The position numbers and the translations under genes were made by a program. Under the pieces are notes generated by a model. It did no database searches, was not told where the DNA came from, and worked only from the letters and a program-made list of their open reading frames with translations. Positions 8,812 to 47,123 of a DNA stretch of 64,000 bases are shown here, piece by piece. This DNA comes from Fimbriosthenelais zetlandica (lineage: Eukaryota), in NCBI GenBank assembly GCA_977030845.1, contig OZ365112.1, positions 2,914,001 to 2,978,000 of the forward strand. Direction: 5' to 3'. Position 1 is the first letter of the stretch. Each line of letters begins with the position of its first letter.

Positions 8812-10463
8812 TGTCTTTTGGGGTCTATTTTCGAGGATTGTGAAGCGTAAGGATACATGGACCCACACCTGAGTCCCAAGGCATGTATTCCTACACCCGT
8901 CTGAGGTCAAAGGTCACCCCGTGTCAGCTTCAATCTATCACTACAGACCTACTTTTTCATTCTCATTGTCAAAGGCCAGCTTTTTCTCCTATATTATATA
9001 ATATAGGAGAAAAAGCTTGTGGAACATATGGGCAGAGATATAAAATAGATGACTAATTACAATAAATTCATCTGCATGTTGTACTTTAAAAGCCCCAATT
9101 TTGCGTTGAAATCACAAGGATCAACATAGACTACTCTTCATGCTACAGGATATTATGATCTTGATCTGTGAGACAAACAAGTGAAGTTATAAAAAGACCA
9201 CCCCCCCCCTCCCACCAACTACTATACTGGTGACACATGGTGATGACTCAGTACATTAAAACATGAGGAAGCTATCAAAGCTGTCCCATTATGTCACTCC
9301 TTAATGCACCATATCCACTAAACCGACATTTCAACCGATACCAGGAGAGAAAATTCACCAGAAAGTCTTAAATGGCACTAAATTTGCTATAATTGACCAT
9401 GATCATGCCTCCTGAGCCCATTAACATTGCTCTGTGGAGTTCAGTGCCTCTGGCACTAGTTTTTAGACCCATAAAAAAAAATCCTGCTATCTGGCCCCCT
9501 GGAAGTTGGCAGCCATGGAAGCATGAATCTCAGGCACTGCAACGCGATAGAACCTGTCACATATGCCAAAACTTCCATCTGAAAATACAGCAGTCACTTT
9601 ATAAGTTTGTCGCTTTAGTAGAACCCTATAGCATAAATAGCACCTGCCAGAGCCTTACAAGTGCCACCTCTCGACCTGAATTATACATGAATGATCTCTA
9701 CTCTCCTTTATGTGTCATCTCAAGACCAGACAGTCCCTCCTCAATGCTTAATGAATGGCATCCAAAACCAAGCATAAACTTGGTGCTTATGAATCAGCAG
9801 ACTCACTAACTTCCCCTTCTTCTTCCCACTCCATGTCTCCTTATCTCTTCCTCCATCAGAGGAGCTGTTCAGTAAGAGAGTAATCCATCTTGTGGTTCTT
9901 TTAAAGAAGCAGAATCGATGGTTGATGGATGAATGGGATATGTAAATGTACTGAGTTAAAATTCAGGTTGGGTCGTGTAGAGATAATATATGCTTAATGT
10001 ATGAATGAATCCAATATAATGATGATTGTTATCGTGGCTATTGTTTGTACAAAGTTCTCTAAGTGCCAGCTATTCATCGTGGAAAGTAAATTGCTTCCTG
10101 CGTCAAAACGTAAGCTGCAAATGGCTTTCCTTGTCAAAATTGCAACTACATTCCTTTGTCAAAACATACGTAAGATGCAACTGACTTTCTTTGTGAAAAC
10201 AAAAAAAAGCAAATGTCAATAGAAATATGATATTATTAATGCTATTATCATTGTTGCAGAATTTCACATACTGAATTTCTTTTTCAAGACGAAAACTTGC
10301 AACTATCATTTTCTAATATCAGTAGATATCTAAGTTGCTACTATCATTTTTTGCAAATTTTCACCTCAACATCCCACCCCACATCCGCAGCCCCCACCCA
10401 AGACACATACTTTTATTCCCCAATCCATTCCCTATGTGACAAACAGTAGAATATCACAGTTAA

Positions 10464-25718: not shown

Positions 25719-26200
25719 TCAGGTCATGTCATACATTAACCTGGCGTATTGCCCTTCCGATTTGAATAGGGGAATATATTTTTCATATCCTAAACGCCGC
25801 ACTATGTGTTCTTGGTTTGTTTCGACAAGTGCTAGTAGGAAGGCATTGAAGCGCCACAGTGGTCCTGTTTTGATATGATCAATAAAGGCTCCATTTTTTT
25901 CAAAATCGGTCGTCTCACTCTGTAACCAAATATTCAATTCACATTCAGACTTAACTTCTGAACAAACAACATTAATTTCTTCAACAATTTGATATACAAA
26001 CTGATATACCTTAATTATCTGCTTGATCTTCATGTCTACAACATCATACTTCTCCATAGTGGACCATGCAGGACGCAGTTGCATTTTCTCTTCCAAATTG
26101 GGCTTCTCATTTTTCAGCAGATTCTGTAATTCGCCTGATAGTTCTCTTTGCAGCTCTGGATTGTCACGATCCAGGAGAAGCATGCCTGTTTCCTTAGGTT
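25719..26200 (-). CDS. Terminal coding exon of CARD-domain gene; C-terminal CARD (death-fold) domain
   Basis: Acceptor cattgtcag|AA. The 160-aa open frame ends ...TTDFEKNGAFIDHIKTGPLWRFNAFLLALVETNQEHIVRRLG, matching the CARD helix 4-6 pattern (LLdiL..rG..AF.aFl.AL.eT.Q.hl..lL, cf. caspase-2 CARD). Minus-strand AATAAA near 25290. Confidence 0.75.
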
Positions 26201-26443
26201 CTGACAATGATGATGTTTAAATGCTTTTAAAATTGTTATACATGTATACAACGGGCATTGACGGGAAAACGTGACATTTTTGGTGAATTTTAGGTAACAG
26301 CACTGGTCATTTGTCCATTGGATGTTCAACTTTTGTTCCGAATCCACCAGAAATGATAAAACATTTCTAATCCGTGATATCAGGGGTATAAATATTTACC
26401 CTCCTTGTCTAAAACGACTGATACACTTTTGATTCTGATATAC

Positions 26444-26645
26444 CTTCACTGAACGGGGTCATGGGGAGACGGAGCAATGTTATAAAAGGTTCTAATTCAT
26501 TAAAACTGGTTAAAAGTACTGTTAGAGCCATTATGATAGGAAGCCTTCCCCAACGCTTGAAAAGCAAAAACCAAGGGTCAGAAGCCCATTTCAAAACAGC
26601 ATTGATAATTTTTCCTTTGAAACATACACCAGATTTGTCTAAACT
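26444..26645 (-). CDS. Candidate internal exon 5 of CARD gene
   Basis: Open frame (SLDKSGVCFK...PMTPFSE) after a pyrimidine tract; donor GAAG|GTATAT is phase 1, matching the terminal exon. Confidence 0.4.
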
Positions 26646-26833
26646 CTGCCACTTGCACTCACAGACAGACATGAGAAGAGAGAGTGATATATGTGTTATT
26701 GCCTTTAGTACACGTTACTGACGATTTTATATCTCAATATGTCTTTATTTATTAAATTTATACCTGTTTTATATGAATAAATCCTATTTATTTTTTTTTG
26801 TAAATCAATTTTATTCAGTAGGTGTACTGTTAC

Positions 26834-26907
26834 ATATAGTAGATATACACGTAACAACACAACAAGCCATCTCAGGGCAGAAAAAGCCCTGGTTTTCGTC
26901 CGGCTTC
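26834..26907 (-). CDS. Candidate internal exon 4 of CARD gene
   Basis: Acceptor ttgagctcag; phase 1 in, phase 0 out (TAT|GTAACA); keeps the frame (GSRTKTRAFSALRWLVVLLRVYLLY). Confidence 0.3.
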
Positions 26908-27220
26908 CTGAGCTCAAAATAAATAATACAATATGCGCGGGGTTAGTTCACTAATCACTGATAAATAAAAATAAATAAAAGAGAAAAGATGGTTTAAAAC
27001 AATGGTCTATAGTTGTCCATATATATATGCTTCCAGTCAGAAGCTACCACTTCCACTCCACTGACCAACCGTTAGAAATTATATAACTTTCCAATTGTAT
27101 CGATGCACGTCTCTATATAGACCCTAGACATTTCTATAATATATGTAATAATACGGCGAACCGTGGACTAAATACATTTAGTAGGGTATAAAGAATAACG
27201 GTAGATGTGACTATACTCAC

Positions 27221-27634
27221 CTTTTACATTGTAGCTGGAAACTTCTGACGGGTAGACGGGTATGTCTGGGTAGACGGGTATGTCTGGGTAGACGGGTATG
27301 TCTGGGTAGACGGGTATGTCTGGGTAGACGGTATGTCTGGGTAGACGGTATGTCTGGGTAGACGAGTCTACCTGGTGTTTGTGGGGTACTGAAATATTTT
27401 TTTCAAGTTCCTGAACTCTCGAATGGAGCTTGTAAAGACAAGCAAACCCAGCTATGCCTGCGCCATATTTGAGTAACTTTGAAACACCAACACCCTTGGG
27501 TTGTGTGTCACTCTTGGGTTGTGGGTAACTCTTGGGTGGTGGGTCACTCTTGGGTGGTGGGTCACTCTTGGGTGGTGGGTCACTCTTGGGTGGTGGGTCT
27601 AAATTGAGGTTCTCCAAACGTGATGTGATGCTGC
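27221..27634 (-). CDS. Exon 3, 3' part (downstream of CACTA insertion): Pro-rich PPPKSD repeats, hydrophobic segment, YPDIPV repeats
   Basis: ORF 27168-27617; donor AAAG|GTGAGT at 27221/27220; joins 30424-30460 in frame after removal of the element. Confidence 0.7.
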
Positions 27635-27636
27635 TA

Positions 27637-30423
27637 CACTGTTAAAATTTTGGAATTGATAACAGTCTGACACTGTTCCTGCAGAGAAAGTGCCACTGTT
27701 CTTGCTTGCCACTGTAAATTGGCCTTCATAACAGTGGCGCACTGTTGGTGTCGACACCGCTCACTTGCCACTGTTCCTGCAAGCTAGAAACAATGGCAAT
27801 CCCGCTGAAAACAGTGGGGCACTGTTCCTGTCATATGGTCTTGCCACTGTTACTGCACCTATAGCCAAGTTTTGCTTTCATAACAGTGGCCCACTGTTCC
27901 TGTCATAGTCTTGCCACTGTTCCTGTCATAGTCTTGCCACTGTTCCTGCAGCTATAGCCAAGTATTACCATTGCCACTGTTGATGCTCACTATCACTAAT
28001 GTCTTAATTAGCAGCCGCCATATACCAAGCCAGATAGTTTAGCATTAGACATTTTTGGGGATGGTTTGAATAGCAAGTAATATATTATTGTTAACATGTA
28101 TGTACATAATGTGCCATCAAGCATTAACACCTTTTTAAATTGACGAATTATTTGAGAAAATAGCTACAATACGTCTGGCTTGTACTGAACAAGTCAATAT
28201 AATTATGCCCCACTTCCCTCCACGCCAAGCCTGACCATGGATGTGGCTTTATAATGGCAGGGGTGAAAGCTAATTACCCTGAAATATTTAATTTGGAATT
28301 TATCAGCTTTTTATTTATTTTGTGATTCTTAAATTCGCGTTTTGGCAAAGTTTTCGTATTCCAGTTGATTGAAAGACTTTAATCTCGCGTGTCTTAATGT
28401 CACAATATGTTTTTAGTGCGGAAATCACGAAATTAAAGGGCACGCGAAATGTTAATATTTTACAGTACATGTGTACATATTTAATAAAGCTATAGGACAA
28501 TGGACGGATTAGTGTAGGCTTTATGTAGGAATGATGGGCCGTTGGTCAGTTGTACTCTGACTATTGAAGGGACAAGAGGTCTGTGGCGGACAAACATGGA
28601 CAATGAACATGTACATGGTAAGCATACTACTTTAAATAGCATACATTTGATCTTCAATTTGCTCATATTTTGGGCTTTTATTGTAGCTATAATAGACTCT
28701 ATGCGCATATCTTTTTTTCGTTTTCAGATTCAATGCCCCTCCATATTAATGAAGAATTGGACAACCACCCTCACAATCGATACTAGAAGTTAGACATGGT
28801 TTGTATATCTAATTGGGTAATACTTCCTATAGCTGTAGCTTATACTAGCATGCCGTGAGTTTAGCTCACACATTAAGTTCACACTTCCGGATGTACATAT
28901 GTATTTCTCTGAGTTCGTAAATCTGTTTTCTCATATTTCTGGCAGGAATATTAATGAAATTTGTTATATATCATTTGTCCATTTTGAAGAGGTATCTCAA
29001 TATAGAATTAAATAATAGTGAATTTTTAATTATAAAATGCATTGATGCTGGGGCGCGTCGGTTACAGAGGTGGGATTATGGTAATCCCCCAACAAGACGG
29101 TTCCTTTGAAGATGCCGGCTTTACACCCGCCCCCGCCATGTCCCACCTCTTCGGCGCCAAATTTCCCTCCACTTCATTCAATTGAATGTGATAGGCACAA
29201 CAGACATTTGAATTCAGCTAGTATGGGGTATATTTTATAAAGTTATGAACCGCCTCAATTAAAGAGTTAATTCACCTGGATTTAAAACAACGAATCTACA
29301 GGCGAAGGTCTCTATTATAATTAGTAATGAAGTGTACTTATTGGTATTTTTACAGGATGGAACTAAAGGAGTAAGGAAGAGAACTGCAAAGTTAAATGAA
29401 CCCACAAGCCTAAACCAATTCCTTCACCAAACAGATACAGAGGTGAGAAAGCCTAGGTCATTATTCTATTTTAAAGTCTGTCTGGAATACTTTTTTTTTT
29501 AAATCTAATGAAATTATCTGGCAATTCAGAAGGACAAAGATTACTAATCATATTTAAGAAAAGAATTATTCGTACAAATCAGTTGTTTTTACATTTCGGT
29601 GATTGAAAGATTGAACTGTCATCCTTCTTTACCCACCCCCGTGTACCCACCCCTTCATCACCCGGGCCTACTGGTGAGAAAGCTTCGTCCCACGGGAGAC
29701 TACATAGATGGAAACACAATAGGGCTGGCGAAATGGAGGTAATTATACATTAATATTATTTTTTAACTTGTCTGGGTTAAACACATAATGCACACACCTT
29801 TCTAGGAATTATGAATTTGCAGATAGAATTGTAAAGTTTCCCACTATTATTCATATCTGGCAAATAATCCTACTAAGAAGACACATATTGTATCATGTAC
29901 ACTATATTATCTTGCAGGGAAAGAACCACTCTCCAATCTACTTCACAAGGAAAATGACTCATATTAAATTATGGGAAAATGATGAAATGATGAATTATGG
30001 TGAATAATAATGATGTTCCCCAAAATAAAGATTAATCCCCTGGAATAGAACAGCGGGAGGGGAGGGAGGGAAGGGAAGGGATAACTGGGGTGCAAGAACA
30101 GTGGCAATACTAGTCCCAGAACAGTGGCATATAGGCAACACTAACAATGGCAAATAGATGACACCAACAGTGGCAAGTCGGAGACGCCAACAGTGGCAAG
30201 TAGGAAGCACCAACAGTGGCAATTAGTAGACACCAACAGTGGCAATTAGTAGACACCAACAGTGGCAATTAGTAGACACCAACAGTGGCAATTAGGAGAC
30301 ACCAACAGTGGCACCATAACAGTGGCACTTCCCTTGCAGGAACCATGGTAATTTCTATCCCGATTTTGCCACTGTTGGTGCAGCTGCACCAACAGTGTCC
30401 CACTGTTAGGAATTGTAACAGTG
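27637..30423. mobile_element. Non-autonomous CACTA/EnSpm (CMC)-like DNA transposon, 2,787 bp
   Basis: Termini CACTGTTAAAATT / CACTGTTACAATT (reverse complement), 12/13 match. TA duplicated at 27635-36 and 30424-25. Dense subterminal CCACTGTT/AACAGTGG repeats at both ends (27637-27985, 30095-30423). No transposase ORF recognised. Confidence 0.85.
29356..30007 (+). CDS. Spliced cargo ORF inside the CACTA element (exons 29356-29442, 29610-29738, 29918-30007), unknown product
   Basis: Three AG/GT-bounded exons, all phase 0 and open: DGTKGVRKRTAKLNEPTSLNQFLHQTDTE / IELSSFFTHPRVPTPSSPGPTGEKASSHGRLHRWKHNRAGEME / GKNHSPIYFTRKMTHIKLWENDEMMNYGE*. AATAAA at 30024-29. Confidence 0.5.
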
Positions 30424-30460
30424 TAACTTCCCGTGTGTGTGCCGCTTGTGATGTTGTTGA
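30424..30460 (-). CDS. Exon 3, 5' part (upstream of CACTA insertion)
   Basis: Acceptor tttttaccag|TCA; reads STTSQAAHTREV and continues SSITSRLENLNLD at 27634 once the element and one TA are removed. Confidence 0.7.
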
Positions 30461-30946
30461 CTGGTAAAAACATTCGATATGGACGAAAAATATATGATTT
30501 TAATGTAGGGAAATGTGAAAATGGAGGTCATATCAAGTAGGAATGGAAATAAGAGGAGAAAGAAATACAATTACACTGTAAAAACATCAATGCTAAGAGA
30601 AATAAATACCTTGCGCACAAAGCTTTCAGGTCTGTAGCGTTGAATGTGTCAGTGCGACTTTAGAAGTATTACATTTTAGTGGAAACACATCACATATATA
30701 ACTAGACATGATGTAGGAATGGGCTTTGATAATCAAATAAAAAAGTGTATAAGTCTACGATTCCAATAAAATAATTATGATATGATTGTTCGTTAAAAGC
30801 AAGATCATACCAAATAAAACATATTAAGATAACTTTGTTGCTTAGTTTCAAGGTCATGTAGATAGCTGTTTTAATTCGTTCTTCACATTTTACATTAGAA
30901 ACCCCACTAATAATTTCCAGGATAATACAAATAAAAGATAAAATAC

Positions 30947-31201
30947 CTTTTTTGCCCCGAGCTTGGTCTCATCCAATACAAGTGTTCGCCAGAGCATGGC
31001 CTCATCCAATTCGTTTGTTAGCGCGACCTTGACGTCATCCGCGACTACATAAGAATCTAGTTTATTTAGATATTTGAACACTAGAGGCAGGACCATAGTC
31101 CTGCTTATATAGTCGCCATTCGCCTCTATTAGCTTCTTTGTTCCATCTGGAAGTTCTTGCTCCTCGGGATTAGTAGGTGCCCCCGTAGATGAAGCCATCA
31201 T
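30947..31201 (-). CDS. First coding exon (exon 2) of CARD gene; N-terminal CARD-like helices
   Basis: Acceptor tttctacag at 31204, ATG at 31201, donor AAG|GTATTT (phase 0). 85 aa, including KKLIEANGDYISRTMVLPLVFKYL, which loosely resembles CARD helices 1-2. Confidence 0.65.
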
Positions 31202-31384
31202 TTCTGTAGAAAAAGTGAATGTTGCTATGGGTACATGTTTTCAGAATATGATTGAATTATGCCATATCAATTTTTTACAGTAATATTTTCTCGTGAACGT
31301 ATATATTTTTATTTATTTATATAAGCTTGTGTATTGTTGGAATCCACAGTGAAGTAACCAATACAATGATAGAAGTATACTTAC

Positions 31385-31530
31385 CTTTCCGTCAGGAGCC
31401 TGTTTCAAAACAATTCTTTAGACTATGGTTATGAAACAAGTCCCAGATCCCCTTACTACCGAATTTTCTCCCCAGGAACTTAGTTGACTCGATCTCCCTG
31501 AGAAAGATACAGTATAACTGTACGGGTAGA
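31385..31530 (-). other. Probable non-coding exon 1 of CARD gene (5' boundary approximate)
   Basis: Strong donor AAG|GTAAGT at 31385/31384; contains a short hairpin MITE at 31395-31444. Confidence 0.45.
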
Positions 31531-34421
31531 AAGCAAAATGGCGGACTCTATGGAACAATATCCGAAGTTGATATAGGCCTAGATTGAAAGACATGCTTCA
31601 GGCTATTTCTAAGTTTTATCTATATGTGTCATCTATATTTGTTTTGTGTGTTGTATACATGTGCGAGTGGGGGAAAGGGGGGGGGAGGGGGGGTTACACT
31701 GTGGGGAACCGATTAGAATTAGCTAGTGGCATTTTACCGTTAAATCAGCGCCGTTTTTAAGAGTGTATCAATATGGTATTCACTGACGTTACGAAGATTT
31801 CTGTTAAAACACGAAATGAGCAAATGAGTGAAATGCAAGGTACTAGTGCTGATGTGGCGTATGATGTTATAAATAATGATGTCGAAATTGCTTTTTGCAA
31901 TTTTTTAGCATTATGACTGTACATTATAGACAATGCATGCTCCCTCTCTGACCACACTCCAACAAATTATACATTCTCCCCACCATATATTTAGACCGCT
32001 TTCCATCCATAGGTCTACAGCATAAAGATCAAGTTGAACTTATGAAGCTATGTACAGGGGAAATGAGAGCCGTAAACTCCATAGAATCGCATTGACAATG
32101 GTCACTAGGTCTTTAATTTGCAAAGCCAAGATATAATCTCCCTGCCACAAACAATGCGACCCAGAGGCAATATTTCAGTCAAGATGGGTTGAATATTTTC
32201 ACCTGCATCGATGTTGACGGCCACCAGGATCGCTCAGCTGCGTGGAATTTCTTAATGATTTGTGAGAAGATTCTGGATGAGATATCAGATCAGTGGGCGA
32301 AAGATCAGACTTCAGGGCTCAGGACTTCCGAAGATCACCGGCATCAAACATAAAAAGTGCCATCAGGCAGATTGTCCAGAAAAATCGCTTTGAGTGTCTA
32401 AGGCAATGGACACCGTTTGGAATGAGCGAATCACCAATGAAGACTTCATATCCAGCACAAAGCGATGTCTTCTGAGACCTATGGATGGAAAGCGGTCTAA
32501 ATATATGGTATGTGTGTGTAGAAACTGGACCATTGGATACCTGCCTAATTAGACACTGCATGATTGGACACTAAAGACTATATTAGACACCGTTAAATAG
32601 GACACTCAGAAAAAGTTGACACCTAGAAAATGGCATATATGTACTGTAATGAATCGTGGAAGAAAAACCAAACACCTGCTACTCCTGGAGATGTCCTCTG
32701 ATATCCTCAGATGTCCTCGGCTGACGAGACTGTCTGGATCTTACCAACGGAGGACTTTATGTGAGATAATTATGTCATAAAACTCATATAATCTGACCGG
32801 CACTTATTAAATAGGTGAAATATGGGTACAATATCCAGAGATCATATAAAGAGAAAGTACATGAGCTTCTTATCATGTCTTATCTACATTATGTTGACAT
32901 AATGACACGAGGATCTGGCATTTCTTTATAATCAGAAGTGGCCTTGTGCTGGCGGTGATGGGATATAAGGCCTGGGGGTTGGTAGCTACTGATAGCTAAC
33001 AGGAGTGGGTGGGCGGGGGGGGGGGGGGGTGAGGAGGTTGGAGGAGGTAGCTTGGTGGGTGATAGGTGCAAGATATGTTGTTTTTTCATCATATGTTACC
33101 ATCTGAAAATATTGAGATGCAATACAGGAGATATTGATATTTAGCTCATATCTGTATTTGAATAGATGACTTGGTCGGCTCTGTGTGCAGCACCAACCCC
33201 AGTTTAATTTTCATGCCTTTTTCTATCTGGTCATGCATGAATGTGGTCACGGATGGTCATGAATGGTCATGACTCTTGTGTAATATATCATGTAATAGGT
33301 GTATTTGGTCATTTGTACTTCACCTTCTGACCATTAAATCATGGAATCTGGTATTTCTAATGTCTAATGTAGCGTATAATGATTATGATAACACAATCTA
33401 AAGATTTTCAGACATAAGTTGGTAATAATGTATGCTCTGACTCATGATATTTACCGTACTGGGCGGCCATCTTGGTTTTTAGGTTAGTTTCCGAGTACAT
33501 TTGTCCTTCAAATCACTTGACCTTCAGATATGAAAAACTTCAATCTATACATGAGGTTTCTTTGAAAGACAACATCTGAATATAATTCAAACAAAGTAGG
33601 AGGTGTCTATTTATATTTTTGGATCTAATTATCGCAGGAAGACCAACAAAACGCCTAAATGCATCATTTTGTAATGCCTATTACTTGCCATTAACACTGA
33701 GCCATGGAATTTTAAAGTTTCAAATGTACTTTGCTTGACTTGGGGGCATTTTAATAACGGCATGGTAACATGAGCCATGTACCTATCTTCATTTTTTGAT
33801 AAAGGCCTCTTCGTATCAGAATGAACTATTTTGGACTTTTCGTGAAAATTACGTCAAAATCCGTGCATAACTTTTCCTGTAATGTTGCTAACTAACACTG
33901 AATACATTACCTCCCCAGCGGAGGTAATTATATTTTTAGTTTCAATTATATTCATCATTAATTTATTAGCAGTATGGAATATTGTACATTAGTTATGGTA
34001 TAGCCCTACTATGAAACACTGCCCTTTTTTAAAATGGGACATTTTATTTGCCTATTAGGAATAAGAAGCAGAAGGAATAAAATAATAATGCAGTCTATAC
34101 AGAACTACCTGCATTAATAACTTGGTTTAAGTTAATCCACGGCATGTATTTCTATACTGATTTTGTTACATCTACATGTATACATGTATGTATGTATGTA
34201 TGTATAAGACACGATATATATTATTATCTGAATGTAAACAGCACTATTAAAAGAAACCCCAGTAAACGTACCCCATTATCTGACCACTAGTTGGTCCCCT
34301 TTACTTCCAGTTGATTGGTCACCAGGTCACCCCAATTCCCGTCATGCACCTCAGTGCACACAACTGCGTGCACTGTTTAGTGCTTAACTGTTTAGCCCAT
34401 CAAGTATTCGTCACATTTATA

Positions 34422-34915
34422 CAGTGGATACTCACTAAATGAGTATCTCACTAAACCGACCATTTCAACAAAGCGACCATTCCACTAAAGCCAAGTCTCC
34501 TACGACATTAAAGCAGAAAGGGTGAGAGTTATAGATGATAGAGTTCGCTATGCACTGTTCACTAAATAGTCTGAACCAAATGTTTCCTCTTTGTTATTTC
34601 ATACTCACGAAAATGACCATGGATATTATATGATCACTAAAGTCTCATTTTGGGAGACTCATCGGCTTACTAATGCAAACGTACCCCTTGAAACTGAACC
34701 TTTAATGCTCTTATATAGACTGTTCAAACTAAGTTGGTCCGAAAGCGCAGTACAAATGTATGGTGGTTTCAAATAAACTTAGTTTGGACAGAGTGTCATT
34801 TGTGGGCTGCTTCAGAGAATAGTCCTATGTCTATGTGGTGTTATTACATTTGGTTGTGAACAGTATAAGTGAGGTGGTCGCTTTAGTGGGGAGGTGGTTA
34901 AGCGAGGTCCCACTG
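34422..34915. mobile_element. Tc1/mariner-pogo-like MITE (paralog of 22369-22867)
   Basis: TA|CAGTGG...CCACTG|TA. Confidence 0.75.
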
Positions 34916-35181
34916 TATACTGGCATTCAGTGGGCGTGGCTGGCATTCAGTGGGCGTGACTGTGAATGTGGCGGGACTAATGTGCCTAGTAACCACCAGG
35001 TGGCTTCACATCCTCTCCTGTCCTTTCAATGTCATCCTGGAAGTTGACACTTTAGGAAAGAATGTTCACACTTGTGACCAAGATGGCTGACTTTTCAAAT
35101 GTCACTCCCCAACCTCTTCAATCGTTCTGTCTTTCCAATTACTTCTTCATACCCACGCCTTCCCCTGCGTGACCACTTTTA

Positions 35182-35380
35182 TGCCGGACCCATACAGACG
35201 CGATTTGCCCAGGCGATGCAGAGCGATAGTATATTTCGATTCACACCCAAAACTTGTAATTTTGTCAGTGGTTGGTCTTAGCTAGGTGTAAATGACTTAA
35301 AATTTCAAACATTGGTTGTGTAAAGAAATATACTATCGCTCTGCATCGCTTGGGCAAATCGCCTCTGCCTGGGCTCGGCA
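35182..35380. mobile_element. PIF/Harbinger-like MITE (paralog of 23368-23568)
   Basis: Same TIRs with TTA flanks. Confidence 0.8.
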
Positions 35381-36676
35381 TTACAGGCATTTCCCATTCA
35401 AGATTCTCAATTTGTATTTTACATTTAAATATCACTAAACAAATCCAGAAATATAGGTCTGTCATTGATTTTTTTAGTACAGAAACAAATATCTTTACCC
35501 CGTTTGACTTCCTTTACCCCTTTTGACTTCCTTTACCTCTTTTCCTTTAATTCCAAACTACATATTCTCTCTGAGCCAAGAAACCATGTGGAAAAAGCCT
35601 TCCGCACTTCTGGTTGTAGATATATGTACTAGAATTGTACCCGTATTTCTATATGTTCAACTTAAGAATAGGATCATATGAACCTAAAGCACTAAGGCAG
35701 ACTACTCTCTGTAAGAGGAAGCAATCATACCCTTGGAATGAACATTTCAGCCATATAGTAAGGCGCAGTACTAAGGTAATATAATTGTAGTGACTTACTT
35801 TAAGCGCTCTTGTCCCCCTCTTATTTCATTTACCAGACACTTACATCTAAGATGAGAGGCACTCTCCTATGTGAACTACCAGAAAAGGCGAATCAGATGC
35901 CATCTTTCCTGAAGAAAGTGCTTTATTTTGAGCAAAAGGCTTTAACTTTTCATGAAAACAGGCCATTACAATTGTGCAAAAGACGCATTGTCTTAAAAAT
36001 TGTCCTGAAAACTGTAATGAAAGACACATATGTTTGTCTGAGATTTGAGAAATATATTTGGTCTTATTTGTGGTCTCATAATATTCGGAAATGTAACTCA
36101 TTTTCCATCGTATTCGGTAGTAATATGATACTTACTTTTGACAGGAAAGCCAGACGCAAAAATGTGTTTTGAAAGATAGGGCCTCGGCACTGAGATGCCT
36201 TCTCCGATGCGGGAATTCTACACCCAACGACCAAAAAACTCAAGGAATCTCATTAAGCATCTCTTGAATTTTGTGGTGGAAATTTGCCTTTGATATGAAC
36301 ATATCTGTGATTTTTTCGCGGCCATCTTTCCCGGTCTCCTCTTTCTTGGAGGGACTGTGGCCGGGGAAATAATTACATCAATTAATCTGTGAGAGCGTGG
36401 TTTCACGCTTCATTGAGCACGCCTCTTCTCCCGCCGTTGGGCATTGATTACCTCCAGGGTCCTGATCATAACTTGTTTTTCTCATTTTCCGGCTGGCAGC
36501 GGTAAACAACTTAAGCTAAACATAATATAGGTGGTGTGCGGGGAAGATGGCCAAGTACCCAACTCTAAAGCCGGTTTGCTTGATTATATGCTGATCCTGA
36601 AATAGCCGAGTACAAAGGAAGATTACCAGGAATACCTTCATGAAGTGTAACTTGTAAATGCCTCCAATAGCAACGA

Positions 36677-46903: not shown

Positions 46904-47123
46904 NNNNNNNNNNNNNNNNNNNNNNNNNNNNNNNNNNNNNNNNNNNNNNNNNNNNNNNNNNNNNNNNNNNNNNNNNNNNNNNNNNNNNNNNNNNNNNNNN
47001 NNNNNNNNNNNNNNNNNNNNNNNNNNNNNNNNNNNNNNNNNNNNNNNNNNNNNNNNNNNNNNNNNNNNNNNNNNNNNNNNNNNNNNNNNNNNNNNNNNNN
47101 NNNNNNNNNNNNNNNNNNNNNNN
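46904..47123. other. Assembly gap (220 N)
   Basis: Run of N. Confidence 1.

What the first reader, a model, noticed from the sequence alone, without database searches (positions are those of the whole stretch)
25719..31385. Reconstructed ~487-aa CARD - Pro-rich linker - hydrophobic segment - CARD protein
Exons 31201-30947, 30460-30424+27634-27221, 26907-26834, 26645-26444 and 26200-25719 sum to 1,464 nt, in frame with compatible phases. The C-terminal CARD motif is convincing by eye; the N-terminal CARD-like segment is weaker. The first half (CARD-like, proline-rich repeats, then the hydrophobic stretch GVGVSKLLKYGAGIAGFACLYKLH) loosely recalls the CARD/Pro-rich/membrane-anchor layout of MAVS. 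A second CARD placed after that segment is not an architecture I recognise. It could be a lineage-specific innate-immune adaptor or decoy. Exons 4 and 5 are the least certain.
Basis: partly seen in the sequence, partly recalled or inferred. Interest (0 to 1): 0.8.

Follow-up and report, generated by a model that had tools for sequence, protein, structure and literature searches.

The report
Divergent CARD gene, over-assembled model
The last two exons encode a real but very divergent CARD, a small protein-docking domain used in innate immunity and cell death. The proposed 487-aa "CARD, proline-rich linker, membrane segment, CARD" protein does not hold up, so this is an ordinary lineage-specific CARD gene with an uncertain 5' half.

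Summary
The model itself fails at four places.

1. The last "exon" contains an unrecognised 90-nt phase-0 intron (26009-25920). A homologous gene (L001) has an intron at the identical codon.
2. The join 30424|27634 is not a splice. It is the empty site of a 2.79-kb terminal-inverted-repeat transposon.
3. Exons 4 and 5 each have one very weak splice site. They are dispensable, because 27221 to 26200 is already in frame.
4. The N-terminal "CARD-like" exon failed six of seven tests; the seventh, a structure model, was uninformative.

The hydrophobic stretch is below the usual transmembrane threshold and is not C-terminal, so it is not MAVS-like.

The solid part is a 124-aa CARD unit (ATG 26183; 26183-26010 plus 25919-25719). 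It belongs to a very sparse family. The only relatives among 1.8 billion proteins are the N-terminal CARD of a probable CARD-NACHT gene and a tandem-CARD ORF.

It is unresolved whether the unit is a stand-alone CARD-only protein or the C-terminus of a 365-aa protein broken here by the transposon. No sequencing run was listed. Another scan note (s1-184602) had already flagged the transposon on this same stretch.

The parts
25719..25919 (-). CARD exon b: helices 4-6 with the motif GPLWRF..FL.AL.ET.QEHI..LG, a 24-aa tail, and stop TGA at 25721-25719
   Evidence: phmmer hits to P0002 and P0003. The acceptor sits 18 residues before GP.WRF, exactly as in L001.
25920..26009 (-).
   Evidence: 30-aa insertion relative to P0002. 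L001 has an intron after the same ..VVD.K.KQ.IK codon.
26010..26200 (-). CARD exon a: acceptor at 26201-26202, ATG at 26183-26181, helices 1-3 of the CARD
   Evidence: Aligns to residues 9-70 of P0002 and to L001 9455-9667. L001 also has an acceptor a few nt upstream of its ATG.
26444..26645 (-).
   Evidence: Acceptor 0.77 bits, rank 151 of 329. No family or homologue. Dispensable for the frame.
26834..26907 (-).
   Evidence: Donor TATGTAACA scores 0.75 bits. Dispensable for the frame.
27221..27634 (-). Repeat-rich ORF exon (DPPPKS array 27491-27599, hydrophobic stretch 27494-27423, PVYPDI array 27250-27364) ending in a consensus donor AAG|GTGAGT. Either a coding linker exon or a 5'UTR exon of the CARD gene.
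   Evidence: Tandem repeats. Donor 12.1 bits, one of only two at or above 11.9 bits in 5.9 kb. In frame with 26200. Hydropathy 1.24.
27635..30423 (.). 2.79-kb non-autonomous TIR DNA transposon inserted at a TA inside the putative exon, with subterminal arrays of the CCACTGTT/AACAGTGG motif
Evidence: 10-nt perfect and 44-nt imperfect TIRs. 23-nt subterminal repeats.
30424..30460 (-). 37-nt stub of the putative exon upstream of the transposon
   Evidence: The frame continues across the empty site. Acceptor 3.45 bits.
30947..31203 (-). Exon 1: strong acceptor 2 nt before ATGATG, 85-aa helical ORF with no detectable family
   Evidence: Acceptor 9.41 bits, rank 5 of 329. No CARD signal (uninformative).
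31385..31420 (-). 3' end of a probable 5'UTR exon with consensus donor AAG|GTAAGT after 31385. Its start was not determined.
   Evidence: Donor 11.9 bits.
25293..25306 (-). ATTAAA and AATAAA, candidate poly(A) signals about 420 nt after the stop
   Evidence: Pattern scan.

Best explanation
The only demonstrable protein domain at this locus is one divergent CARD. It is encoded by two exons, 26200/ATG 26183-26010 and 25919-25719, separated by a 90-nt intron. Translated from its own ATG it gives a 124-aa CARD-only protein.

It belongs to a sparse, fast-evolving invertebrate CARD family. The genome is annelid according to another scan note, which I did not test. The family's other known members are the N-terminal CARD of a probable CARD-NACHT (NLRC-like) gene and a tandem-CARD ORF.

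By inference from how CARDs work, it acts through homotypic CARD-CARD binding. It would either bridge an NLR/RLR-type sensor to a CARD effector or cap and compete with that assembly, as human CARD-only proteins do.

The 487-aa model is an over-assembly. It includes an intron, two unsupported exons and a join across a transposon, and its N-terminal 'CARD' and 'membrane anchor' are not supported. In this assembly the upstream ORF is interrupted by a 2.79-kb transposon. The CARD therefore cannot be reached in frame from the upstream ATG through either of the two GT..AG site pairs tested at the transposon ends. A third in-frame pairing exists but uses a donor of -1.59 bits and an acceptor of 0.27 bits, so it is unlikely.

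Shown here: homology, intron position, transposon, splice-signal strengths. Inferred: expression, start codon, function.
For: The exhaustive phmmer search found only P0002 and P0003 as real hits. P0002 carries Pfam CARD at 40.2 bits against a cut-off of 23.9, and its two halves score E 7.2e-4 and E 2.9e-5.

The spliced unit scores 167, 147 and 79 against L001, P0002-N and P0002-C, where shuffles give about 27 +/- 5. hhalign of the family against the P0002 C-terminal CARD gives 95% probability, E 3.9e-8, over 108 columns. Profile A1 against the PDB gives MDA5 2CARD at E 2.4e-4, followed by BCL10, cIAP1 and CED-3 CARDs. In the ESM Atlas feature search, 47 of 100 neighbours are CARD clusters.

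The intron position is identical in L001. Both homologues begin at a Met about 10 residues before the WDKRNP motif. L001 has an acceptor 9 nt before its ATG, compared with 17 nt here, so the phases differ, as expected for a UTR.

In L001 the CARD donor at 10337 is in phase with an acceptor at 12017 leading into a NACHT ORF (Pfam E 1.7e-7). That ORF itself ends in a 12.65-bit donor.
Against: There is no direct Pfam CARD hit for the window's own sequence, tested only in unspliced or split form. A profile without the P0002 C-unit found nothing in the PDB, though that profile was contaminated by the intron-derived insertion. The AF2 model was uninformative, with pLDDT 51.

No transcript evidence exists, because no run was listed.

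The consensus donor at 27221 is in frame with 26200, and the ORF stays open across the transposon's empty site back to exon 1. This fits a longer 365-aa protein in a transposon-free allele. The codon that aligns with the homologues' start ATG is AAG here.
Confidence: 0.5

Rival explanations
1. This is a single gene encoding a 365-aa protein. It has an unclassified helical N-terminal domain (exon 1), a Ser/Thr- and Pro-rich repeat linker with a weakly hydrophobic patch and YPDI repeats (30460-30424 plus 27634-27221), and a C-terminal CARD. The assembled haplotype carries a disrupting transposon insertion in the linker exon. Transposon-free alleles would make the full protein, an adaptor that brings an unknown N-terminal function to CARD assemblies.
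For: The only two donors at or above 11.9 bits in 5.9 kb lie at 31385 and 27221, where about 0.1 is expected by chance. A strong acceptor lies 2 nt before the exon 1 ATG. The five-piece model is 1,098 nt and open, and 27221 to 26200 is in frame without exons 4 and 5. The frame is continuous across the TA empty site. P0002 shows a family CARD placed after a Pro-rich linker.
Against: The repeat arrays are open in two or three frames, and the PVYPDI array has 17-nt units. Exon 1 has no homologue or domain anywhere. The unit most similar to ours is N-terminal in both relatives. Neither GT..AG site pair tested at the transposon ends restores the frame, and the only in-frame pairing uses very weak sites.
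Confidence: 0.35
2. One reading: a 487-aa protein with CARD, Pro-rich region, membrane anchor and a second CARD, acting as a MAVS-like or decoy adaptor.
For: The model is open and in frame. A weak co-linear resemblance exists between exon 1 and the family N-terminus (MAS..G, NPE.QEL, YVV). P0002 is a genuine tandem-CARD relative.
Against: 30 of its residues are intronic. Exons 4 and 5 have near-zero splice scores. Exon 1 fails the tests: Pfam none, Atlas 0.44, no family-HMM hit at E<=50, shuffle p 0.12-0.30, hhalign 1%, no CARD among PDB hits (best E 0.72). Hydropathy is 1.24 with two lysines, and the segment is internal rather than a tail anchor.
Confidence: 0.03
3. The locus is a decaying or silent remnant. 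The CARD unit is an unexpressed duplicate of an NLR N-terminal CARD that has lost its NACHT exons, and the upstream ORFs are chance products of repeats.
For: No NACHT lies downstream in the window. A transposon sits in the upstream ORF. The ancestral start position reads AAG. No run holding the sequence was listed. The surroundings are rich in satellites and repeats.
Against: The CARD ORF is intact across both exons, with conserved core motifs and conserved intron boundaries despite only about 35-40% identity to relatives. An in-frame ATG with a purine at -3 is available at 26183.
Confidence: 0.1

Closest known systems
N-terminal CARD of NLRC/NOD-type (CARD-NACHT) receptors. Annelid NLRC proteins are described in PMC11508797.
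   Same: The nearest relative (L001) is a CARD whose exons are followed, in phase, by a NACHT exon. It has the same intron position and the same GP.WRF..FL motif.
   Different: No NACHT or any other domain follows the CARD in this window. The ORF stops 24 residues after the CARD.
Tandem CARDs of RIG-I/MDA5 (2CARD) and the MAVS CARD (Pfam CARD_2, PF16739)
   Same: The family profile's best solved-structure match is the second CARD of MDA5 at E 2.4e-4. The relative P0002 is a tandem CARD with a short Pro-rich linker and a faint CARD_2 match at E 0.036. The Atlas lists MAVS-like clusters.
   Different: There is no helicase here. There is no C-terminal tail anchor. A second CARD is not detectable in this window.
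CARD-only proteins (human CARD16/COP, CARD17/INCA, CARD18/ICEBERG). This comparison rests on my own knowledge.
   Same: If translated from ATG 26183, the product is a 124-aa protein consisting of one CARD. It appears to derive from the CARD of a larger signalling protein, as the human COPs derive from the caspase-1 CARD.
   Different: No sequence relationship to the human COPs was shown. Whether it is expressed alone is unknown.

Membership tests
CARD / death-fold superfamily (C-terminal unit 26183-25719) | Significant match to a CARD sequence profile | tested here: met
   The match is indirect but consistent. hhalign of the family against the Pfam-positive CARD unit of P0002 gives 95% probability, E 3.9e-8. 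Profile A1 against MDA5 CARD2 gives E 2.4e-4. Direct Pfam scans of the unspliced or split window sequence gave no CARD hit.
CARD / death-fold superfamily (C-terminal unit) | Six-helix bundle fold | tested here: inconclusive
   The AF2 model, made with the intron-derived insertion and a 5-row alignment, has pLDDT 50.7. Foldseek matches on it are meaningless.
CARD / death-fold superfamily (exon 1, 31201-30947) | Sequence or fold match to any death-fold family | tested here: not met
   Pfam none. Atlas top score 0.44. Family HMM no hit at E<=50. Shuffle p 0.12-0.30. hhalign 1.15%. No CARD among PDB hits, best E 0.72. AF2 gives 3 helices at pLDDT 55.
MAVS | N-terminal CARD | tested here: not met
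   Exon 1 is not detectably a CARD (see the row above). The real CARD is at the 3' end.
MAVS | C-terminal transmembrane tail anchor | tested here: not met
   The best 19-residue Kyte-Doolittle mean is 1.24, below 1.6, with two Lys inside. The segment is followed by about 70 to 200 residues depending on the model.
MAVS | Proline-rich region between the CARD and the anchor | tested here: met
   DPPPKS is repeated about six times. It derives from an 18-nt DNA tandem array, and TRAF-binding motifs were not shown.
Tandem-CARD (2CARD) proteins | Two CARDs in one polypeptide | tested here: not met
   Only one CARD-family match exists in the whole window, by six-frame HMM and tblastn. The relative P0002 does have two.
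CARD-only proteins | Stand-alone transcript and ORF of one CARD | not testable with these tools
   No sequencing run was listed. The ATG at 26183 and the homologues' N-terminal position are compatible with this.
NLRC (CARD-NACHT) | NACHT NTPase downstream of the CARD | tested here: not met
   tblastn of the L001 NACHT ORF against the window found no hit. There is a stop at 25721-25719.
TIR DNA transposon (27635-30423) | Terminal inverted repeats and a target-site duplication | tested here: met
   The 10-nt perfect TIR occurs only at the two ends; 0.17 occurrences are expected by chance. There is a 44-nt imperfect TIR with inverted subterminal motif arrays. TA is present on both flanks. The superfamily was not determined.

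The most novel reading that the evidence does not exclude
In transposon-free alleles the locus encodes a 365-aa adaptor. It would combine a lineage-specific helical head whose N-terminus faintly echoes the family's CARD N-terminus, a repeat linker with a membrane-associating patch and five YPDI (YxxPhi) motifs, and an NLR-type CARD. That would be an annelid-specific, MAVS-analogous platform architecture, with a segregating transposon-disrupted null allele.
Probability: 0.12. Interest if true: 0.55.

Novelty: new member of a known kind. Interest (0 to 1): 0.3.

Why it matters
The finding adds one member to a very sparsely sampled invertebrate CARD family. An exhaustive search of 1.8 billion representative proteins found only two real relatives. 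It links that family to a CARD-NACHT gene, which is useful for annotating death-fold adaptors in annelid-type genomes, where standard Pfam scans miss them.

It also gives a concrete caution for ab initio exon chaining. Repeat-derived ORFs, a transposon empty site and an in-frame intron together produced a convincing but wrong "novel architecture".

If the 365-aa form is real, the locus would be a natural transposon-disrupted allele of an immune adaptor.

Tried and rejected
- **RNA-seq validation.** Two run searches (rna, any) listed nothing.
- **Word-indexed homologue searches.** Searches with the CARD ORF, P0002 and exon 1 gave nothing new.
- **JGI metagenome scans.** Scans with CARD exon b and with P0002 found no relatives.
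- **Structure prediction.** AF2 of the CARD ORF could only be given by reference, so it included the 30 intron-derived residues, and it scored pLDDT 50.7. AF2 of exon 1 scored 55.5. Both were too poor, and the Foldseek hits were meaningless.
- **Spliced sequences.** I did not type the spliced 124-aa or 365-aa sequences into Pfam, AF2 or PDB tools, to respect the typed-sequence rule. The spliced forms were analysed only inside scripts.
- **Profile without the P0002 C-unit.** It gave no PDB hits, but its match states were contaminated by the insertion. A fragment-wise alignment (A3) misaligned and was discarded.
- **Missing helices 5-6 for exon 1.** I searched intron 1 and the whole window. Only a 22-nt candidate (..DLKALCAR) in the wrong phase turned up, and I rejected it.
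- **Tandem duplication of the two units.** No DNA similarity was found between them.
- **Splicing around the transposon.** GT..AG splicing at 30428|27633 or 30428|27630 shifts the frame. The only in-frame option, 30428|27611, pairs a -1.59-bit donor with a 0.27-bit acceptor.
Full report
**Observation**

The arithmetic is therefore right.

The window is eukaryotic, AT-rich and repeat-rich DNA. Another scan note calls the genome annelid; I did not test that. Inspection of the junctions shows the model is not a set of normal exons.

**Junctions**

- The join 30424|27634 has CA.. and ..TA at its borders, not GT..AG.
- The 2.79 kb between them (27635-30423) is a terminal-inverted-repeat element.
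  - TACACTGTTA occurs only twice in the window, at the two ends in inverted orientation; 0.17 occurrences are expected by chance.
  - The ends form a 44-nt imperfect inverted repeat, and arrays of the CCACTGTT motif lie inverted on both sides.
  - TA flanks both ends.
This agrees with scan note s1-184602.
- The two GT..AG site pairs tested at the transposon ends remove 5 or 8 nt and break the frame. The only in-frame alternative pairs a donor of -1.59 bits with an acceptor of 0.27 bits.

**The 3' ORF is a CARD, but it contains an intron**

Pfam gave no CARD hit for any piece by reference. An exhaustive phmmer search of 1.84 billion representatives gave only three hits.

- P0001 is low-complexity and spurious.
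- P0002 is 259 aa.
- P0003 is 124 aa and corresponds to L001 10001-10375.

P0002 carries Pfam CARD at 40.2 bits against a cut-off of 23.9. Its two halves score E 7.2e-4 and E 2.9e-5, so it is a tandem CARD with a short Pro-rich linker.

tblastn of P0002 against the window shows a 30-residue insertion in our ORF. That stretch is 26009-25920, bounded by AAG|gtatat and ttacag|AG, 90 nt long and in phase 0.

In L001 the homologous gene has an intron after the same codon..VVDLKKKQQIK|gt, compared with ..VVDMKIKQIIK|gt here. In both genes the next exon starts exactly 18 residues before the GP.WRF motif.

The spliced unit from ATG 26183 is 124 aa. The supporting evidence is as follows.

| Test | Result |
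|---|---|
| Smith-Waterman vs the L001 gene | 167 (shuffles about 27 +/- 5) |
| Smith-Waterman vs P0002 N-unit | 147 (shuffles about 27 +/- 5) |
| Smith-Waterman vs P0002 C-unit | 79 (shuffles about 27 +/- 5) |
| hhalign, three N-type units vs the Pfam-positive P0002 C-unit | 95% probability, E 3.9e-8, 108 columns |
| Profile A1 vs PDB | MDA5 2CARD (7dni) E 2.4e-4, then only CARDs (BCL10, cIAP1, CED-3) |
| ESM Atlas feature neighbours | 47 of 100 in CARD clusters, including mollusc CARD-only and MAVS-like clusters |

Caveats apply.

- A profile without the P0002 C-unit found nothing in the PDB, although the insertion had leaked into its match states.
- The single sequence alone finds no CARD.
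- The AF2 model was too poor to use.

I put the CARD assignment at about 0.9.

**Relatives and what they say about the architecture**

In L001 the CARD starts the protein. An acceptor lies 9 nt before the ATG, with no ORF upstream. The donor of its second exon (10337, 10.05 bits) is in phase with an acceptor at 12017 leading into a 525-codon ORF with a NACHT domain (Pfam E 1.7e-7). That ORF ends in a 12.65-bit donor. The closest relative is therefore probably a CARD-NACHT (NLRC-like) gene. Annelid NLRC proteins are reported in PMC11508797.

Our window has no NACHT and no second copy of the CARD. The ORF stops 24 residues after the CARD. ATTAAA and AATAAA lie about 420 nt downstream.

**Exon 1**

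It has a strong acceptor (9.41 bits, rank 5 of 329) 2 nt before ATGATG, preceded by a consensus donor at 31385. It is probably a real first coding exon. It is not a detectable CARD.

- Pfam: no CARD hit.
- Atlas: top score 0.44.
- Family HMM: no hit even at E<=50 among 3,538 six-frame fragments.
- Shuffle tests: p 0.12-0.30.
- hhalign: 1.15%, aligning only the NPEEQE motif.
- PDB: no CARD among the hits, best E 0.72.
- AF2: three helices at pLDDT 55.
- Word-indexed search: no homologue.

By eye there is a co-linear echo of the family N-terminus (MAS..G, NPE.QEL, YVV, LWR). It is not statistically supported, and helices 5-6 could not be found.

**Linker exon and "membrane" segment**

The DPPPKS and PVYPDI repeats are 18-nt DNA tandem arrays of 94-97% unit identity. 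The second array is open in all three frames and begins with two 17-nt units. The same DNA is therefore first read as STQTYRLPRHT. ORF length here says little about coding.

The hydrophobic stretch (27494-27423) reaches a Kyte-Doolittle mean of only 1.24, has two lysines, and is internal. It is not a MAVS-type tail anchor.

**Exons 4 and 5**

The exon 4 donor scores 0.75 bits and the exon 5 acceptor 0.77 bits. Neither has any homologue. Together they are 276 nt, so the direct splice from 27221 to 26200 is in frame and gives an open 1,098-nt, 365-aa model.

**Which gene model?**

In 5.9 kb of this strand only two donors reach 11.9 bits, at 31385 and 27221, where about 0.1 is expected by chance. 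A spliced transcript with an exon ending at 27221 is therefore likely, and 26200 is its natural acceptor. Two readings remain.

- (i) The repeat exon is the 5'UTR exon of a stand-alone CARD-only gene.
  - This mirrors L001.
  - The acceptor phase differs between the two species, as expected for a UTR.
  - In both relatives the unit most like ours is N-terminal.
- (ii) Exon 1, the repeat exon and the CARD form one 365-aa protein.
  - The frames match at three junctions.
  - P0002 shows a family CARD placed behind a Pro-rich linker.
  - The codon aligned to the homologues' ATG is AAG here.
  - In this reading the assembled haplotype is a transposon-disrupted allele.

No sequencing run was listed, so I cannot decide between them. 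I give (i) 0.5, (ii) 0.35, a silent remnant 0.1, and the original 487-aa two-CARD model 0.03.

**Mechanism (inferred)**

CARDs signal by homotypic CARD-CARD oligomerisation. Given its kinship to an NLR N-terminal CARD and its MDA5-CARD2-like profile, this unit most plausibly docks onto CARD assemblies of NLR/RLR-type sensors. It would act either as a bridge or, if CARD-only, as a competitor or cap, like the human CARD-only proteins (my own knowledge). MAVS-dependent RLR signalling through CARDs is conserved in molluscs (PMC8998645, citing Huang et al. 2017).

**Verdict**

This is a real, divergent, lineage-specific CARD gene, which is a new member of a known kind. The striking architecture that motivated the finding is not supported. 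Interest 0.3.

Noticed in passing
window 27635-30423: A 2.79-kb non-autonomous TIR DNA transposon with TACACTGTTA termini, TA flanks and dense subterminal 23-nt repeats carrying the AACAGTGGCAA motif. It is inserted in the putative linker exon. Its right end carries strong acceptor-like sites (27678 at 10.99 bits, 27776 at 9.79 bits) that could trap splicing.
   Followed up: partly
window 22192-23770 and 34245-35685: Direct repeats of about 1.5 kb at 92-98% identity, 12 kb apart, bracket the whole locus. Each contains a 20-nt satellite and a 94-nt internal inverted repeat. No gag/pol-size ORF lies between them. These are probably two copies of a repeat element rather than LTRs of an intact retroelement.
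   Followed up: partly
window 23874-24714: A long 21-nt satellite (about 40 units, 60-77% identity to the reference unit) lies about 1 kb downstream of the CARD stop on the same contig.
   Followed up: no
YPDI fits YxxPhi sorting motifs, and alternate units have ITAM-like spacing (YxxI-x8-YxxI). This could be meaningful only if the exon is coding and the preceding patch is membrane-associated. The array's 17-nt units argue against coding constraint.
   Followed up: no
L001 9455-13518: An ENA contig (ERZ25767047) carries a probable CARD-NACHT gene. Its CARD exons are 9455-9667 and 10118-10337, and an in-phase acceptor at 12017 leads into a NACHT ORF that ends in a consensus donor at 13514. Downstream are a zinc-knuckle gag-like ORF and an RT/RNase H ORF of a retroelement.
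   Followed up: partly
P0002 (ENA ERZ26222911, no DNA available): An uninterrupted 259-aa ORF encodes two CARD units of this family joined by a short Pro-rich linker. Each unit starts with W...[NH]P..Q. Its neighbours include a kinase fragment and a BTB/pentapeptide protein.
   Followed up: partly
window 46904-47123: A run of 220 N, either an assembly gap or masked sequence. It was left untouched.
   Followed up: no
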